Of a stretch of DNA of 64,000 bases, positions 11,926 through 60,450 are shown in pieces. The DNA is from Euprymna scolopes (taxonomy: Eukaryota). How positions within the stretch are numbered: position 1 is the stretch's first letter; the number at the start of each line of letters is the position of its first letter. The position numbers were made by a program, and so were the translations under genes. The stretch lies in assembly GCA_053919585.1 (NCBI GenBank), contig CM132809.1; one strand, given 5' to 3'. The notes below the pieces were generated by a model. That model was given only the letters and a program-made list of their open reading frames with translations, was not told the DNA's origin and did no database searches.

Positions 11926-12437
11926 TTCGAAAGTATTTTTTGTCTTACTTGGAATAATAAAAAAAATCCTTGATTTGAATAAAGTTTTTTTTTAAAATTT
12001 CATTGAATCACTATAATTTGCTATATATAGTAGCTATTTTTGGAATATTTTTAAATAATGCAATGTTTAAATTTTGTCTACATGGTTACGAAACAATTGT
12101 AACACATAATGAAATACAGAATATGATGTTCTTATTTTATATTTTATTGTCTTGATTTTTGCAAAATATTATACGCATGCTCCATTATAAAAACCGATAA
12201 TTATGAAGCTTAATTAATTGCGTCAATTTGTATTGACTTCCATTTAATTGGTATATGAACATTACCGAATTGTAATATACAAAAAACCTTTTAGTAAAAG
12301 TCAGACTTCCTTCTCTAATCAGATTTTTTTTCGATTGTTTAGATGAGTTTCCATTATGGTGCACCGTGCGGAAGCTCTATATGTCTCTCACAGTGATTTA
12401 GTCCGCAATAAATTGTAGTCTACATTGCACTAGAGAA

Positions 12438-12823
12438 ACCACTTGGCCTTCGGGACAAGATCAAAGTGTAGTGTCTGTTCCGGCAGATGCTGCACTTAAG
12501 ATGATTTGTACCAGTCAATGGAGGGGAAACTCTCTATACTGGGACAATTATTATTTTTGGTAACCAGAGTGCCCCCTTTTTGCCTACTTTTAGGGGAGCT
12601 GGTTTTTACCTCACATTAAAAACGGCCTTGTGCCTAATTTGCTCAGTGGGGGAGCAAATAAATACCATCTGTTCTTCAGATGCTGCACTTCTATTTCTTG
12701 TTCTCTTTCGGTGGAGGAGAAATCCTTCAGGACTGAGACAATTTTTATTTTTGTACCTTTTCTTCACGTTAAAAAACGACCCTGGTGTCTAACTCTGTCC
12801 CGTGGGGAGGCATAGTAAATAGG
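12438..12823 (+). mobile_element. U2 snRNA-derived SINE-like element, dimer (unit A 12438-12666 plus 5'-truncated unit B 12667-12823)
   Basis: Head CTTGGCCTTCGGGACAAGATCAAAGTGTAGTGTCTGTTC matches the U2 5' end; perfect 17-bp TSD TACATTGCACTAGAGAA at 12421-12437 and 12824-12840. Confidence 0.88.
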
Positions 12824-13115
12824 TACATTGCACTAGAGAATTTACTAGTGATTTTATAAAATTATATTTATATATAATAGTTTGGATTTAAGTTTTAAAT
12901 GCAAAAGTTAAATGCTTCAATTGTGCTTTAAGCAGAAACATTCATTTCGATCGTGCCCCTTTCATATGAAAGAACCCAATATTTATTTTATATGTCTGGC
13001 CTTTTGACTTGTGTTGTAATAAAATTTCTCAAATACGCTTGTAGTGTTAGGCTATGTAAGGTGTTAACTTTGTTCAAAATCGCCTATTCCTTCTTTCATG
13101 GGATTTTTTCTATTA

Positions 13116-14379: not shown

Positions 14380-14777
14380 CAAAGTGAAAACTCCTCCGTG
14401 TATGAAGAGTCCAGTTTAGAAGTATTGTTCATCCACCCAGCGTGGCTGCAGCCAAGATTGAACTCACTACACGAGTTTGTAGTGTAATTCAAATCTGTCG
14501 GTAGCTGAATAATTGATGTTTCGCCAGGACTATCAAGGGTACGTTTTCATCGTGACCCCATTACTAGATTGAGTGCCTACCACGGCTTAAGAGAGTCCGA
14601 TCAACCCTCAAGAGAAGGATGGATCGCGCCAGTTTCACAACCTGGTATTTTACCTCGCAGTACATACAGCGCCTCGACTTCCCAAATGTTCACCCATCTG
14701 GTACTGGGCAGGCTCAGCGTTGCTTAACTTCGGTGATCTGATGAGAACCGGTGTGTCAACGTAAATTGTGCCGTATT
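14380..14777 (-). mobile_element. 5S rRNA-headed SINE (SINE3-like) with Deu/Nin-like core
   Basis: Near full-length 5S-like head 14663-14777; body blocks CCATCCTTC, GACTCTCT, GGCACT, AGTAATGGGGT, GTCCTGGCGAAA in Deu-domain order; 3' boundary approximate. Confidence 0.7.
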
Positions 14778-15117
14778 GAAAGAGGCACTGTACTTTTTGA
14801 TATTGCGTGTGAAAGGAAGTTTACGGAAGAAGGACATGCAAAGAATGTTAGAAAGAAATCTCCATGGGTGGAGGAAGTAATTTCTGTGGTCATCTGGAAA
14901 AAAGCGGACTCAGTTTGTTAGTTTTAAAAAATTTCATTGTTCACAAGAAAACGGCAAATGCCGAAAATGATTATAGTTAATTTCGTCTGAAACGGAAATC
15001 CACATTTAGGTTCCCTAAATGAAAAGGAAATACTCCAAAGAAATATTGCAAGAGAGAAATAGTGAAGGAAATAATTGGATTAAAAAAATGTAAGCAATCT
15101 ACGCAATTTTCTTACAG

Positions 15118-25213: not shown

Positions 25214-25633
25214 CAGGGTGACCCCCCCCAAAAAAAAAGAAAAAAAAAGCTAAATGGAGGCCATCTAGAACATATGCTGTAGAACGGAGAAAAAAGGCCA
25301 AAGACCCTTGTGTTTTGATGTGATGTTTTGAATATAATAAACTAGTTATGACCAAAGTTTCATTTCATTCGGACAAAACGCTAAGAAATGGAGCCTAATT
25401 AGAGTTCCTATTTACAATGTCTCCCCACGGGACAGGGTTAGACACCAAGGTCGTTTTTTAATGTGGAGAAAAGGAACAAAAATTAAAATTGTCTCAGTCA
25501 TGAATGATTTCTCTTCCACTGACAGAGAACAAGAAATTGAAGTCCAGCATCTGAAGAACAGATACTACACTTTGATCTTGACTCGAGGGCCAAGCAACCT
25601 AATTAGAGTTGAGCCCGGGTTTTTGGGCCACCC

Positions 25634-27777: not shown

Positions 27778-27930
27778 TTTATTGCGGACTATTATCCTCA
27801 TCTTTTTAGTTGTTGCTTCATGATGTTTTGGCACACCTATTCCTCTGGCCTTCGTCAGGCCAGAGGAATAGTTGGCCGAAACGTCGTGAAACAACACCTA
27901 AGAAAGATGAGGATAATAGTCCCCAATAAA
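27778..27930. repeat. Palindrome of a Penelope-type hammerhead-like tail
   Basis: Minus CTGACGA-aggcc..; plus aggcc..ggcc-GAAA-cgtcgTG; arms extend to GATGAGGATAATAGTCC. Confidence 0.75.
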
Positions 27931-51381: not shown

Positions 51382-54300
51382 TATACGAAAGTATTATTTT
51401 ATGGATAAACTTTAAGTATTTACTTCAACATGCTCATTTCCATTGTTATCAACGCCAACAAACGTCCTACAGGAGAACATGGACGTCGCTTCAACGCTCC
51501 CACCTGCAACGAGGTTTCTGCAGTCATCCAGGGTGAGCACAACAACAAACGCGACATAGTTATTCATACTAGGGGTGGAGGTCTACAGCGAATAACTGAA
51601 ATGCATCGATAATACGACGCACTACAATATCCCCTACTATTTCGTTACGGTGATGATGGATACCATTTTCAAATAACATTTCAACAAAACTTTGGGCAAA
51701 CCACCATGAATCCAAAAACTGTTATATGCAGAGCATATTACGCATACAGACTGATGGTTCGCAACGACGATTTCAACACTCTCCTTCGGGGTGGACCTCT
51801 TCTGCAACAATTCATAGTCGATATGGAGTCTGAAAGGCTCCTATATATTCGGGTCCACCAAAAACGGCTTCGGTCGTCTTCATACATACATCTCCGCAAT
51901 GGCATGAGAAATGAAACTGACCCTCACACTGTTGGAAAACTGACAATTCTTCCGTCCACATACATTGGTGGGCCACGTTATATGCACGCCCGCACACAAG
52001 ACCCAATGACGTACGACCGGATTTGTTTATTATCTTCACCTGCAATCCATCGTGGGAAGAAATACGAGATGAACTGTTTCTGGGCCAAGAACACTACGAC
52101 CGACCTGATCTCATTGCCCGTGTTTTCCGGCTTAAATTGTGCAAACTAATGGAACTTATAGTTAAGGGTGAAGTCTACGGCCGGGTAAGGTGCCACATAT
52201 TCACCGTAGAGTGGCAAAAAAGAGGCCTTCTGCATGCCCATATCTTAATCTGGATTTGTGAACAGATTTAATCCACTGATATCGACAAAATTATCTCAGC
52301 CGAGATTCCCTATCCTGGATTGGACCCACAGCTTTACGAAATTGTCAAAGCAACGATGGTTCATGGACCCTGTGGTCCTGGCCAGAAAGCTCGATCATGA
52401 TGTAAAAAGAACGCGGTGTGCGCTTGCGGCTACACACGGAGATTTGTCACTGCAACACAAACAGGAGGTGATGGTTACCTGCTTTACAGGCGACGGAGTC
52501 CAGGTGATGGGGGCCATACGATGATAGTCGGTCGGAGCACTGTTGATAATCGATGGATAGTACCGTACTGTCCCATGATGACGAAAAATTTCCAATCGCA
52601 CATCAATGTGGAATTCTGTCACTCGTTGAAATCCATTGACTATATCTGCAAATGCATCAACAAGGGCAGCGATGCTGCAGCATTTGCTGTTCAGCGCGAC
52701 CGTTCTCGGGACGAGCCGTCTGCTCATGTCATTGGACGTTTCCTGTGTTGCGGAGAAAGTGTATCGCATTTTTACTCATTTCCCTTGCATCAAAGATACC
52801 CTGCAGTTATAAAACTCGCTGTTCACCTTGTCAATTGGCAAAGAGTTTACTTTTCTGCCGGCACTGCTCATCAGGTGGTGGAGCATCCACCAGAAACTAC
52901 GCTTACTGCCTTCTTCAAACTATGCGGCCATGATGAGTTTGCAAAGACGCTTCTGTATCCACAGATCCCTTCCTACTACACCTGGAATAACAGTGGACTC
53001 GACGGAATTGTGGAGATTCTGTCGATGGCTTACCAGAGGTTAAACATGATTCCTTTCTCGGGCGAGTTTACACAGTCCCACCGCATCAACATGAGTGCTT
53101 CCATCTTCGTCTTCTCCTTCACGAAGTCCGTGGTCCTATAAGTTTTGATGACATAAAAACTCTCGTTGGCGTCCTGTGTGAAACCTTCCGTGGTGCATGC
53201 TCCCAGTTGGGACTACTTGAAAACGATTCCCAGTGGGATGCTGTCATGACAGAGGGAAGTCTATTCAAATCTCCCCATGCTCTACGGTTGCTCTTTGCAA
53301 TTATGATAGTATGGTGCGACGTGAGCAATCCAAAACATCTATGGATGAGATTTCGTAACTTCATGACCGAAGACATTTCCAGAAGAGCCCAACTTGAGTA
53401 TACGTCAGTTGAGCTAGACTACTCCCAGGTGATTTATAACGAAGGGCTAATTTGCCTCGAAGATCTCCTTTTAGAAATTGATGGTTCCACTTTACCATCA
53501 TATTGCCTACCTGCCCCCATCCGCCATGAAGGGAATAGTTTGAGCCTAAATTTACTGCGTGAAATATGCTACTCGACCACAGAACTTACTGCGTACATTG
53601 CTGAGAATGAACCTAAATTTTGCCTGAACAACTGAACGTCTACCATATGATCACTGACAATGTTCAACAGAACCGTGGAGGGATATTTTTCTTGGACGCA
53701 CTTGGTGGCACAGGAAAAACCTTTGTCACCAAATTAATACTTGCCCATGTGCAACGGAGTGGAGCTGTCGCTATAGCTTTTGCAACCTCTGGAATTGTTG
53801 CAACTTTACTCCCAGATGGCAGAACGGCACGTTCAGCTTTAAAATTGCCCATCAACTACACACGAACTGAATTCCCAACATGCAACATCGAAAAGAATTC
53901 GGATAAAGCTGTTTTATTCCGCAGATGCAAACTCATCGTATGGGATGAATGCACAATGGCGCACAAAGTTGCGTTGGCAGCATTGAACAGGACACTTCAA
54001 GATGTACGCAACTGTGATAACATCATGGGTGAATTAACAGTTCTGCTGTGTGGAGATTTCCGACAAACACTTCCTGTTGTCTCAAAAGGGACACGCGCTG
54101 ATGCTGTTCAAGCATGCCTGAAATCATTGATACTGTGGGATCAAGTTCACCATTTAAAACTCACAACAAATATGCGTGTCCACCTTATCCGCAACCCGGA
54201 TGCTGCTAATTTCTCTAAAGCACTTCTGGAACTTGGTGAAGGACGTACTCCCGCAGCCAGTGAGGATTACACAAATGTTGAACAGATATCAACCATCGTT

Positions 54301-55892
54301 GAAACGCCAACCCACCTATACCAGGCAGTTTTCGAGAACATTCAGAAAAGCTACAGGGACTTTGATTGGCTCGCCGCGAGAGCGATTCTGGCTCCAAAAA
54401 ACGCCTCCGTCAATTCCATTAATCACAGACTTTTGTAACTCATCCCGGGAGAGGAACGTGTCTATAAATCCATTGACCGCACACCTGATACTGCTGATCT
54501 GGCTGATTACACGGTGAAGTTGCTAAACTCCCTAGAACCACCTGGCCTGTCACCCCACATGCTCCGACTTTAGGTTTGAGCTTCTATAATGCTCATTTGT
54601 AACCTTATACCACCAAACAATGTAATGGCACCCGCCTCGTGGTGACATCCCTGTCACCTAATATTATCAAGGCCCAAATATTGACTGGCTGCGGAAAAGG
54701 AGAGGCAGTGCTAATTTCGAGGATACCCCTATATCCATCAAATCAAGACCTGGGCATCTACTTCAAGCGATCACATTTCCCTGTGAAACTGTGCTTCGCG
54801 ATGTCCATCAACAAATTACAGGGCCAAACCTTTGACGTTGCAGGCATTCATTTACAGGAGCAATGTTTTTCTCATGGTCAGCTCTATGCAGCTGCCTCAC
54901 GCGTGGGCTCACAATCCAAACTCTTTGTGTTTTCTTCTAAAACACTTGCTAAAAATGTTGTTTTCAAAGAGGTTTTATAATTTCTCAACAATTTTACACT
55001 TCAATTTCTCCTCTCTATTAATCGTGTTTATTCCTTCGTAAACTTTGCCAGCACCCAGTACAGAGTTCACAAACCTGAAGTTTTTTTTGTAACAAAATAA
55101 AAAAAAGTTTCATGTATGTACACAATAACCTTTATGGAAAAAGAAATTGAAACCGATTAAATAGAGTAAAAATGTGAATTTGACAAAACCTAGAGTGCCC
55201 TTAAATATATTCAGAAGCATTCGATCCTTATAATTCTTTCATCTTTATTTGGTTGCAAACTCTGCAAAATTAGATTCATTATGAGCAACCCTAAACAATT
55301 GTGTTGGTTGTGGAATAAAATTTTAGCAGTGCAACAGTAAATTATTTTTCTGTTTTTGAACGTCCATTGAAGAAACAACTGATCCTGAAGAAATTGCAAA
55401 ACAGTCTACACACATATTTAGTGAAAATGTGATTCAGAAGTTTCCTAGATGTCGGTTTAACAAAACATAGACCCCAACAACCAAGCACAAGTAGTATGCC
55501 CGGCAACATAAGTTAAGGATTTTTTTGCCAGAGTTGACTAATTGTAGAACTATACAACTACAACGACATAAATTCTTAAAGCAAATAGATAGTCGGTGTA
55601 TCCTGCAGTTTCTTTCGCATAAAGTTAAAGACGTCATGGCTCCCAAAACCTTACCATAGTATGTGATTTTAAGCTGGAAGAATAGCTGCTACGGGGACAA
55701 ATCATAGAAATTAGATTATTGGTGGCACGTTGCATTCACTATGTGGAAGCTACATTGATCAGTAAGGTGTCAATATAACCAAACTTATAATTTTAGGATT
55801 ACAAAAAATAATATTGAATATACCAAAATACAGACATTAAGCATAAAAATGCCATTAAATCAACCCACAAACAAGGTCGGGTAATACTGCTA

Positions 55893-58898: not shown

Positions 58899-60450
58899 CG
58901 AGGTGCTTTCAATAAGTTTCCAGACTTTTCTGTAGAGGCATTTAAGATTCGCGTAGACTCTTGAAAATTCAATATGTTATTGCTATACATCTGAGATGAC
59001 TGGCCAATTTTTACGATTTCGTGTTCAATGGAACAGCTACAGAAGGGATTGGAATGCATCCCACTAAAGCATGATCATCACAGCTGGTGAATTTCGAAAA
59101 TGCAATCTGGACGCGAGGATACTAAAATAAAAAATGATATGCAATAAAATTCTGTTTTAAACTTGGAAAAATGCTACAAAAACGTATGGAATGCTTCTGA
59201 CCGCTTTTGGACCATCTTGCATGAATCTATTATCAGTATCATAAGAGATTCAGGGAAAGCAAAGGGTCTGTGAGAGATGATTAGATGTGTGGGAGGAGTA
59301 AAGAAGTCAGAACACCAGAGTTGATTGATCAAATAAAGAATTTCATGGATAAGGACCGTCGTGTGTCTATAGAAACAATAAGTGCACAGTTTGATGCCAG
59401 TGGGTGAACTCTACACACAATTATTCGCGAGGAATTGAAAGTGTGGCAGATTTGCTTGAATGCATCAGTCCACAACTCCATTCTTGTCACAGACTGTTTG
59501 ACCAAGATGGCCATCAAGACAATTCCTCACATTTCCTATAGTCCAAACCTTGCTCCCTGTGACTTTATGTTCCTATTTACAATGCCTCCGCACGGGACAG
59601 AGTTAGACACCAGGGTCGTTTTTTAACGTGGAGAAAAGGAACAAAAATAAAAATTGTCTCAGTCGTGAAGGATTTCTCCTCCACTGACAGAGAACAAGAA
59701 ATTGAAGTGCAACATCTGAAGAACAGACACTACACTTTGAGGTATTTATTTGCTCCCCCACTGAGCAAATTAGGCACAAGGCTGATTTTTAATGTGAGGA
59801 ATGAAGGGGAAATGGATACCAACTCCCCGGGGAGTAGGGGAGTTGGATAGTGACAATTGGCATGAAGAGTTGCCCCTACATATGGTCTTTGCTTGCAGTA
59901 TCTGCCGGAACAGATACTACACTTTGGGATATTAAATCTTTTATTCATGTTAAAAAATACAGTCAAAATCAACGATGAACAAAAAACTTAGGCACATGGC
60001 CAACTCAAAAGGGGGGATTTTGGGGGTCGTTGGTCATCCTTGTCACTCCAGAACTAAACAAAGTCAGAAATTTCTCCCAGCTAGTATCTTCTTTCACCAT
60101 AATAACGCATTCACCCTTTCATATTTGGGGACGTCCTACTTAACTCCCAATTTTTAAAAACATTTTTTATTGACGTGTAAAAACAGAAAAGATAACAATA
60201 AAATGGTACAATTTTGATCTTGTCCCGAAGGCCAAATGTTATTCCTTAAGCTCAATGAAAACCTTAGGCGCTGTTCTTATGAGACAACTGAGGAAGTGAA
60301 AGGGGTTGTGAAGAGAGTCATTGATACTCTCGCAGAAGGTGACTTCAATGGTGCCTTCCATAAGTTGTTGGAACGGTACAGCAAGTGAATTGCAGGAGGA
60401 AGAGATTGCCTCGAAGGAGACCATGCATTCTGTTTCACTTTTAAATAAAA
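58899..60450 (+). mobile_element. Degenerate mariner split by a U2-derived element
   Basis: TA-CGAGGTGC TIR; YSPNLAPCDF ends at the insertion point and the mariner sequence resumes at 60241. Confidence 0.88.
59572..60235 (-). mobile_element. U2-derived SINE-like dimer (unit B 59572-59740, unit A 59741-59926, foreign insert 59927-60212, head remainder 60213-60235)
   Basis: Two CAAAGTGTAGTRTCTGTTC blocks; TSD ATGTT at 59567-59571 and 60236-60240; precisely interrupts the mariner. Confidence 0.88.

What the first reader, a model, noticed from the sequence alone, without database searches (positions are those of the whole stretch)
12464..12497. U2 branch-point-recognition sequence masked by a built-in antisense strand
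Seen: AAGTGTAGTGTCTG is followed after a short loop (TTCCGG in unit A, TTCTT in unit B) by CAGATGCTGCACTT. This gives a 13-14-bp stem with G-U pairs that covers GUGUAGUA. The antisense arm recurs in all five units (CAGATGCTGCAC twice, CAGATGCTGGAC, CAGATGTTGCAC, CAGATACTGCA). Known: in true U2 this position holds stem IIa and the branch-recognition sequence must pair with introns. Inference: either a fold-back origin or selection to stop the SINE RNA interfering with splicing; the arm could also bind genuine U2 in trans.
Basis: partly seen in the sequence, partly recalled or inferred. Interest (0 to 1): 0.75.

Follow-up and report, generated by a model that had tools for sequence, protein, structure and literature searches.

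The report
Fold-back hairpin in U2-headed retroposon
The hairpin is real: it is the conserved front-end stem of a very abundant short jumping element of a mollusc genome whose first ~47 letters were copied from U2 spliceosomal RNA, but nothing tested here shows that it acts on splicing or on the cell's own U2.

Summary
Observation confirmed. At 12464-12497, AAGTGTAGTGTCTG / TTCCGG / CAGATGCTGCACTT folds into a 14-15-bp stem (-20 kcal/mol, z -6.5). The same hairpin occurs in three further units of the window. A fifth unit, cut at U2 nt 38/39, keeps only the 3' strand.

The units are TSD-flanked, non-coding retroposons of three subfamilies (A, B, C). Their head matches U2 positions 1-48. The 3' strand sits where U2 has stem IIa.

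Reads and contigs from three species labels show that the family consensus keeps the complementarity. The consensus 5' strand is canonical GUAGUA. The only common variants in the arms swap Watson-Crick and G-U pairs. The 3' arm is 14/14 identical between A and B, while the next 45 aligned columns are 28/45 (p = 0.004). The stem is about twice as stable on the sense strand.

There are no compensatory double changes, and polyA RNA shows no discrete element RNA.

Best reading: a cis RNA clamp, probably born by fold-back copying of U2 nt 29-42. It closes the target-derived leader, as R2 does when it pairs its 28S leader. Masking for the host's benefit, and trans binding of U2, remain untested.

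The scan had already noted this hairpin elsewhere in this genome.

The parts
12464..12477 (+). 5' strand of the hairpin in unit A1: U2-derived nt ~29-42 including the branch-point-recognition box (here GUAGUG)
   Evidence: Sequence. Rfam U2 alignment of the head. 12473 reads A in 99% of family reads and contigs.
12478..12483 (+). Loop TTCCGG of the A/C-type hairpin. The fold closes a further U-G pair and leaves a UCCG (UNCG-type) tetraloop.
   Evidence: Fold. The B-type loop is TTCTT, which equals U2 nt 43-47.
12484..12497 (+). 3' strand of the hairpin in unit A1: element-encoded inverted copy of U2 nt ~29-42
   Evidence: 12489 is a G/A polymorphism in the family (A in 16-47%), and both alleles pair.
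12437..12666 (+). Unit A1: full U2-like head, hairpin, body with Sm-like AUUUUUGG at 12553-12560, and tail ending AAATAAATACC
12667..12823 (+). Unit B1: head cut at U2 nt 38/39 (starts ATCTGTTCTT). The 3' arm at 12677-12690 has no partner strand.
   Evidence: The junction position equals the Keno/Utopia 3' junction at U2 nt 39 (PMC4640811).
12421..12436 (+). Target-site duplication TACATTGCACTAGAGA, left copy. The right copy is at 12824-12839. Together they flank the A1-B1 dimer.
   Evidence: Sequence. Empty-site joints 12431->12834 and nearby appear in contigs and reads.
25407..25597 (-). Unit B2: solo full-length B-type element, 191 nt, flanked by the 13-bp TSD AACTCTAATTAGG (25610-25598 and 25406-25394). 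Hairpin at 25572-25540 with one G-G mismatch.
   Evidence: U2 model: 24.4 bits, E = 0.003, below the gathering score of 46.
59570..59745 (-). Unit B3: head starts at U2 nt ~27. Hairpin at 59737-59705 is fully paired, with 4 G-U pairs.
59756..59932 (-). Unit A3 (C-type subfamily). Hairpin at 59921-59894 has 11-12 bp and the 3' arm reads CAGATACTGCA. Its head 5' part lies at 60238-60213, split off by a ~290-bp insertion.
   Evidence: The C-type continuation AGCAAAGACC is the loose-end consensus behind 12494 in two other species labels.

Best explanation
The 34 bases are the front-end hairpin of a short, non-coding, TSD-flanked retroposon family.

Anatomy:
- The first ~47 letters of each element are a diverged copy of U2 snRNA.
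- The 5' strand of the stem is U2 nt ~29-42, which includes GUAGUA.
- The 3' strand is the first element-specific sequence. It is an inverted copy of the same U2 letters and sits where U2 has stem IIa.

Origin (inferred): a single fold-back or snap-back copying event made the 3' strand, seeded by U2's own CUG...CAG.

Conservation (shown): the stem has been kept in the master copies of three subfamilies and in at least three related species.

Mechanism (inferred): the stem works in cis, in the sense RNA that serves as retrotransposition template. It clamps the target-derived U2 leader to the element and gives the template a closed, stable 5' module. The leader itself probably serves as homology for 5'-junction formation when the partner LINE lands in U2-like sequence at nt 38/39. 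The analogy is R2, where the upstream 28S leader pairs with element-encoded sequence and stable 5' folds favour insertion. Hiding of the branch-point-recognition box is then a consequence, not necessarily the selected function.

Shown: the hairpin, its recurrence, its presence in cis in retroposed RNA, its conservation and its strand asymmetry. Inferred: the origin by fold-back, the role in template stability and 5' junction, and the partner LINE.
For: - The hairpin folds in 4 of 5 units at -12.6 to -20 kcal/mol, z -3.8 to -6.5. It persists in full-length folds.
- Solo unit B2 has a 13-bp TSD at a non-U2 site and starts at about U2 nt 1. The RNA intermediate therefore carried both strands in cis.
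- The head aligns to U2 model positions 1-48, and stem IIa is replaced by the insert that holds the arm.
- The family consensus keeps the pairing in organism A DNA, two other species labels and RNA reads. The consensus at 12473 is A. The loose end before 12667 reads ...CAAGATCAAAGTGTAGT. The only common arm variants (12473, 12489, 12685) are Watson-Crick/G-U swaps.
- The 3' arm is 14/14 identical between A and B against 28/45 in the next aligned columns, Fisher p = 0.004. Against C it is 10/14 versus 19/44.
- The sense-strand stem is -20 to -22 kcal/mol; the opposite strand is -10 to -16.
- Loops have moved away from U2 towards UNCG tetraloops. The A/C hairpin loop is UCCG. The stem-loop I loop is UUCG in ~75-80% of copies and the U2-like UUUU in 20-25%.
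- Unit B1 begins at U2 nt 38/39, the Keno/Utopia junction (PMC4640811). The joint from the A tail to 12474 recurs in reads.
- Precedents: in R2, P1 pairs 28S leader sequence with element sequence, and the leader is postulated to anneal at the target (PMC3774820). Stable 5' modules raise R2-templated insertion (PMC11331408).
Against: - No pair shows a change on both sides, so there is no true covariation. Three of three pair-preserving common variants is weak evidence (p ~0.19 if transitions only).
- The density of common variants in the arms (~0.07 per nt) is not clearly lower than elsewhere in the element (~0.09 per nt; 119 rows of that table were hidden).
- The 5' strand is also constrained as U2 and target sequence, so only the 3' strand is informative.
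- The C-type has lost the 3 basal pairs.
- PolyA RNA shows no discrete element RNA. 85% of reads run on into other sequence, both strands are about equal, and there are no common 5' ends.
- The partner LINE and its leader were not seen in this window.
- No ribozyme or other known RNA family matches.
Confidence: 0.55

Rival explanations
1. Neutral relic. The inverted copy arose once by fold-back when the family was born and has no function. It looks conserved because all subfamilies are recent descendants of one 5' module and because half of the stem is U2 and target sequence that is constrained for other reasons.
For: - There are no compensatory double changes.
- Perfect-complement A alleles still segregate at both wobble positions.
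- Common-variant density in the arms is similar to the rest of the element.
- The C-type lost the basal 3 bp without dying out.
Against: - The 3' arm is not U2 or target sequence, yet it is 14/14 identical between A and B, whose adjoining bodies are only ~62% alike (p = 0.004).
- The loop evolved away from U2 into a UNCG tetraloop in A/C.
- All common arm variants keep pairing on the sense strand.
Confidence: 0.25
2. Host-sparing mask. The stem is selected because a free U2 5' domain on tens of thousands of transcripts would compete with U2 for branch sites or U6, and the antisense strand neutralises it.
For: - The GUAGUA box is predicted unpaired with probability of only 0.002-0.17 in full-length units.
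- The elements keep an Sm-like AUUUUUG(G) site and a U2-like length, so they might enter snRNP pathways.
Against: - No test of splicing was possible.
- A bare GUAGUA box pairs only weakly with a branch site (about -3 kcal/mol).
- By established knowledge, U2 needs SF3a/b bound at stem IIa/IIb, which the element lacks, so the need for a mask is doubtful.
- The stem-loop I and U6-pairing region of the head has already diverged from U2.
- Selection on a retroposon acts first on its own propagation.
Confidence: 0.12
3. Trans-acting anti-U2. The 3' arm binds genuine U2 snRNA as a decoy, sponge or pseudo-branch site, especially from 5'-truncated copies that lack the partner strand.
For: - The predicted duplex of the arm with U2 nt 29-42 is -20.4 kcal/mol.
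- In truncated unit B1 alone the arm is about 53% unpaired in the ensemble.
- Truncated copies are common, judging by the joints and loose ends.
Against: - In full-length copies the cis stem wins.
- The duplex has no bulged adenosine, so it is not a branch-site mimic.
- In the U2 snRNP this region is protein-bound (established knowledge).
- No expression bias for the sense strand is seen.
- Nothing was tested directly.
Confidence: 0.04
4. RNA guide for homing. The 3' arm pairs with the sense strand of U2-like target DNA across the nick site (nt 38/39 lies inside nt 29-42), and opening of the hairpin is coupled to target recognition.
For: - The arm is complementary to exactly the stretch that spans the known Keno/Utopia junction (the B1 junction).
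- The family stacks into U2-like heads (joints).
Against: - Known Keno and Utopia elements choose the site through their endonuclease or DNA-binding domains (PMC4640811).
- Solo insertions at non-U2 sites exist (B2).
Confidence: 0.04

Closest known systems
SINEU (snRNA-headed SINEs of crocodilians; Kojima 2015, PMC4494074)
   Same: - Short non-autonomous retroposons whose 5' head is copied from U2 (or U1) snRNA.
- Subfamilies with different bodies.
- Linked to Tx1/Keno-related LINEs that themselves carry snRNA heads.
- No internal promoter is known.
   Different: - SINEU has a polyA tail and is reported from crocodilians only. These elements end in GTAAATAGG or AAATAAATACC and come from a mollusc.
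- No fold-back hairpin over the branch-point-recognition box is described for SINEU.
- Sequence homology to SINEU could not be tested.
R2 5' module: HDV-like ribozyme whose P1 stem pairs upstream 28S rRNA leader with element sequence (PMC3774820), and R2 SIDEs (PMC3414825)
   Same: - A site-specific retroelement carries target-gene sequence at its RNA 5' end and encodes a strand complementary to it.
- The leader is thought to anneal at the target to make a uniform 5' junction.
- Non-autonomous derivatives keep the 5' module.
   Different: - In R2 the two P1 strands are at least 23 nt apart and form a double-pseudoknot ribozyme that cleaves. Here the strands are 5-6 nt apart and form a plain 14-bp hairpin.
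- No ribozyme family matches here, and retroposed copies keep the whole leader.
U2 snRNA stem-loop IIa and the branchpoint-interacting stem-loop
   Same: The hairpin occupies the position of stem IIa. Like the branchpoint-interacting stem-loop, it involves the nucleotides around GUAGUA.
   Different: - In U2 the GUAGUA box is presented in a loop and the alternative stems are short and dynamic. Here the box is buried in a 14-bp stem of -20 kcal/mol.
- The element fails the Rfam U2 gathering score (17-24 bits against 46).
Keno (Tx1 clade) and Utopia (NeSL clade) U2-targeting LINEs (PMC4640811)
   Same: The insertion junction is at U2 nt 38/39, as seen at the A1/B1 junction. Insertion is sometimes in tandem.
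   Different: Those are autonomous, protein-coding LINEs. No LINE is present in this window, and no 5' hairpin of this kind is described for them in the text read.

Membership tests
SINEU-like snRNA-headed SINE | 5' head derived from U1 or U2 snRNA | tested here: met
   The U2 covariance model aligns positions 1-48 with high posterior probability. The 20-mer AGATCAAAGTGTAGTGTCTG occurs 3 times against 0 expected.
SINEU-like snRNA-headed SINE | Short, non-coding, dispersed copies flanked by target-site duplications | tested here: met
   A 13-bp TSD flanks B2 and a 16-bp TSD flanks A1-B1. Empty-site joints are seen. About 14,000-40,000 contigs or reads were laid per run.
SINEU-like snRNA-headed SINE | 3' polyA tail (all SINEU groups) | tested here: not met
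   The units end in GTAAATAGG or AAATAAATACC directly before the TSD or the next unit.
SINEU-like snRNA-headed SINE | Mobilised by a Tx1/Keno-type LINE that shares head or target | not tested
   No reverse-transcriptase ORF is in the window. Earlier scan notes claim a 7-kb LINE with the same leader, which was not checked here.
Genuine U2 snRNA gene (Rfam RF00004) | Score at or above the gathering threshold, with stem IIa/IIb, Sm site and stem-loops III and IV | tested here: not met
   17.3 and 24.4 bits against a gathering score of 46. Stem IIa is replaced by a 41-nt insert. Only an AUUUUUG Sm-like site aligns, and the 3' domain does not.
HDV-like or other self-cleaving ribozyme at a LINE/SINE 5' junction | Match to a ribozyme model, or nested double-pseudoknot topology with P2/P3 between the P1 strands | tested here: not met
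   No ribozyme family matches at E up to 10. The two strands are separated by only 5-6 nt. Retroposed copies keep the leader from about U2 nt 1.
Structured RNA element under selection (covariation criterion) | Compensatory changes on both sides of pairs | tested here: inconclusive
   0 of 14 pairs have double changes in 5 units, and 87% of cells are paired. Family-level common variants are one-sided wobble swaps. Full copies for a proper test could not be fetched.

The most novel reading that the evidence does not exclude
The element-encoded 3' strand is a guide. When the hairpin opens, it pairs with the sense strand of U2-like DNA (or with U2 RNA) across the nt 38/39 nick site. A LINE-dependent retroposon would then use RNA-DNA base pairing to home, in the way group II introns use EBS/IBS pairing.
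Probability: 0.04. Interest if true: 0.9.

Novelty: new variant of a known kind. Interest (0 to 1): 0.42.

Why it matters
snRNA-headed SINEs are published only from crocodilians. A giant-squid genome paper merely remarks that about 1,300 U2-like loci are probably SINEs (PMC6962438).

This family shows a feature not described for SINEU: the U2 leader is locked to the element by an inverted copy of the branch-point-recognition region. If the stem proves necessary for retrotransposition, it would extend to a second, unrelated target gene the R2 principle that a site-specific element pairs its target-derived leader with its own 5' end. It would also help explain how promoter-less snRNA heads are kept.

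If the stem is only a relic, the stretch is an ordinary repeat feature. The claims about splicing are the exciting part and are the least supported.

Tried and rejected
- **More family copies from public contigs.** An exact 16-mer scan of metagenome contigs gave 119 loci. All were chance matches or ordinary U2-like genes, with no family member.
- **Copies through spurious ORFs.** Exact look-up of six ORF translations that overlap the units found none in the protein collection.
- **Partner LINE in the window.** No reverse-transcriptase ORF was found. The only large TE protein fragments are Helitron Rep/PIF1.
- **Ribozyme reading.** HDV-like, hammerhead and twister readings were rejected: there is no Rfam match and the topology is wrong.
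- **Genuine U2 or variant U2 gene.** Rejected because the score is below the gathering threshold and there is no stem IIa.
- **Helitron-borne or DNA-level duplication.** Rejected because of the 13- and 16-bp TSDs and the empty sites.

Full report
**The observation**

The window reads AAGTGTAGTGTCTG TTCCGG CAGATGCTGCACTT at 12464-12497. All 14 positions pair, three of them as G-U. RNAfold adds a U-G pair and leaves a UCCG loop. The fold is -20 kcal/mol against -6.7 ± 2.0 for shuffles (z -6.5).

The 5' arm occurs in four units.

| Unit | Hairpin or arm position | Energy (kcal/mol) | Note |
|---|---|---|---|
| A1 | 12464-12497 (+) | -20 | fully paired, 3 G-U |
| B2 | 25572-25540 (-) | -15 | one G-G mismatch |
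| A3 (C-type) | 59921-59894 (-) | -16.3 | 11-12 bp only |
| B3 | 59737-59705 (-) | -12.6 | fully paired, 4 G-U |
| B1 | 3' arm 12677-12690 (+) | none | head starts ATCTGTTCTT, no partner strand |

Hairpins of this quality are expected 0.23 times per window, both strands, in Markov simulations. The opposite strand does not form this stem because G-U becomes A-C.

**What the units are**

BLAST within the window finds five units of three subfamilies.
- A1 is at 12437-12666.
- B1, B2 and B3 are at 12667-12823, 25597-25407(-) and 59745-59570(-).
- A3 is a C-type unit at 59932-59756(-). The front of its head lies ~290 bp upstream at 60238-60213.

B2 is a solo element of 191 nt flanked by a 13-bp TSD. 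The A1-B1 dimer is flanked by a 16-bp TSD. Contigs and reads contain the empty site, as joints 12431->12834 and nearby. These are therefore retroposed copies, not Helitron cargo or segmental duplicates.

The head aligns to positions 1-48 of the Rfam U2 model. The whole unit scores only 17.3 or 24.4 bits against a gathering score of 46. In the alignment, stem IIa is replaced by a 41-nt insert that begins with the 3' arm. An AUUUUUG(G) Sm-like site is kept. No ribozyme or other Rfam family matches.

B2 starts at about U2 nt 1 and lies at a non-U2 site. The RNA that was reverse transcribed therefore carried both strands of the hairpin in cis.

**Family-level evidence**

One laying of reads was allowed. 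It covered 12380-12880 at 80% likeness with DNA contigs of organism A, DNA contigs of two other species labels, and raw polyA RNA reads of organism A. Between 13,797 and 40,188 records were laid per run, so the family is very abundant and shared among related species.

- At 12473 the family reads A in about 99% of depth. The consensus 5' strand is the canonical GUAGUA, and A1's G is a rare G-U variant.
- At 12489 (3' arm position 6) G and A coexist, with A at 16-47%.
- At 12685 (3' arm position 9 of the B-type) G and A coexist, with A at 7-37%.
- These three are the only arm positions among the best-supported variant rows, and all three interchange a Watson-Crick pair with a G-U pair. The table hid 119 weaker rows, so rarer breaking variants cannot be excluded.
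- The loose-end consensus before 12667 is ...CAAGATCAAAGTGTAGT in three runs. Joints 12471/2->12667 are abundant. The B-type consensus therefore has the complete hairpin, and B1 is a truncated copy.
- The loose end behind 12494 (AGCAAAGACC...) shows that the C-type exists in the other species, with the stem shortened to 11-12 bp.

**Is the stem constrained?**

Strict covariation is absent. On the five units, 87% of cells pair and no pair changes on both sides.

The informative strand is the 3' arm, because the 5' arm is also U2 and target sequence.
- Between A1 and the B consensus the arm is 14/14 identical, while the next 45 aligned columns are 28/45 (Fisher p = 0.004).
- Against the C-type it is 10/14 versus 19/44, p = 0.06.

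The stem is strand-specific. Consensus hairpins fold at -20 to -22 kcal/mol on the sense strand and -10 to -16 on the opposite strand.

The loops have moved away from U2 towards UNCG tetraloops. The A/C hairpin loop is UCCG. The loop of stem-loop I is UUCG in about 75-80% of copies, with the U2-like UUUU in 20-25% (12451, 12452).

Three of three pair-keeping common variants is weak evidence on its own (p about 0.19 if only transitions are considered).

Taken together, this is moderate evidence that master copies kept the stem as an RNA structure. It is not proof.

**Origin**

The 3' arm is an inverted copy of U2 nt ~29-42. The alleles that would make it a perfect complement (A at both wobble positions) exist in the family. 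U2 itself has CUG (nt 40-42) and CAG (nt 50-52) around UUCUUAU, and these could seed a fold-back. A single snap-back copying event at the birth of the 5' module is the simplest origin. This is an inference.

**How it most likely works**

B1 begins at U2 nt 38/39, which is where the U2 sequence resumes after Keno and Utopia insertions (PMC4640811). The joint from the A tail to 12474 recurs in reads. Crocodilian Tx1 LINEs related to Keno carry U1 or U2 heads, like their SINEU partners (PMC4494074).

In R2, the 5' strand of the ribozyme's P1 stem is upstream 28S sequence and its partner is encoded by the element. The retained leader is postulated to anneal at the target and prime second-strand synthesis (PMC3774820). 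Thermodynamically stable 5' modules raise R2-templated insertion (PMC11331408).

By analogy, the U2 leader would be the homology arm for the 5' junction, and the hairpin would be a clamp that gives the template a closed, stable 5' end. The branch-point-recognition box is then buried as a consequence; its predicted unpaired probability is 0.002-0.17. All of this paragraph's mechanism is inferred.

**Rival readings**

- *Neutral relic.* A relic of the fold-back event remains quite possible.
- *Host-sparing mask.* It is plausible but untested. A bare GUAGUA box pairs only weakly with a branch site (about -3 kcal/mol). The element lacks the stem IIa/IIb platform that U2 needs to function, by established knowledge.
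- *Trans binding of U2.* It is energetically possible for a free arm (-20.4 kcal/mol). The arm is about half accessible in truncated B1. In full-length copies the cis stem should win, and nothing was tested.

PolyA RNA gives no sign of a discrete element RNA. 85% of laid reads run on into other sequence, there are no common starts or ends, and the two strands are about equal. The library is stranded, since one locus gives 717 against 1.

**Limits**

I could not obtain many full copies for a real covariation test. The metagenome scan gave only chance hits. The ORF look-up was empty. No partner LINE is in the window.

Organism names were coded. Run labels include 'mollusc metagenome'.

Earlier notes of this scan describe the same family and the same hairpin on other pieces of this genome and reach a similar verdict. 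I used them as leads only.

Noticed in passing
window 14661-14778 (-): A 5S rRNA match of 60.7 bits (gathering score 38) lies about 2 kb from the dimer. It could be a gene, a pseudogene or a 5S-derived repeat.
   Followed up: no
window 27837-27871: A perfect 15-bp G+C-rich palindromic hairpin (CTATTCCTCTGGCCT / 5-nt loop / AGGCCAGAGGAATAG). It is the only other strong non-microsatellite hairpin in the window.
   Followed up: no
window 51706-54438 (+): Broken ORFs with a Helitron_like_N domain (E = 6.5e-15) and a PIF1 helicase domain (E = 3e-57): a Helitron Rep/helicase remnant.
   Followed up: partly
window 60212-59927 (-): An insertion of about 290 bp splits the head of unit A3 between GATCAAA and CAAAGTG, with CAAA on both sides. 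Its nature was not determined.
   Followed up: no
window 12397-12430 and 12839-12880: The flanks of the A1-B1 dimer are themselves a high-copy repeat (summed contig depth of about 10^5). Many copies lack the insertion.
   Followed up: partly
window 12471->12667 (RNA run X23): One variant copy, with ATCAGT inserted between GTGTAG and ATCTG, gives 717 reads on one strand against 1 on the other. It is a single, strongly expressed locus elsewhere in the genome, and it shows that the library is stranded.
   Followed up: no
window 12449-12456: The loop of stem-loop I of the head is UUCG in most copies and the U2-like UUUU in 20-25%. 12455 A/C toggles the stem between GGAC and GGCC.
   Followed up: partly
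window 12553-12560, 12747-12753: Sm-site-like AUUUUUGG / AUUUUUG is conserved in all three subfamilies and aligns to the Sm site of the U2 model. The whole unit may descend from a complete U2 RNA.
   Followed up: partly
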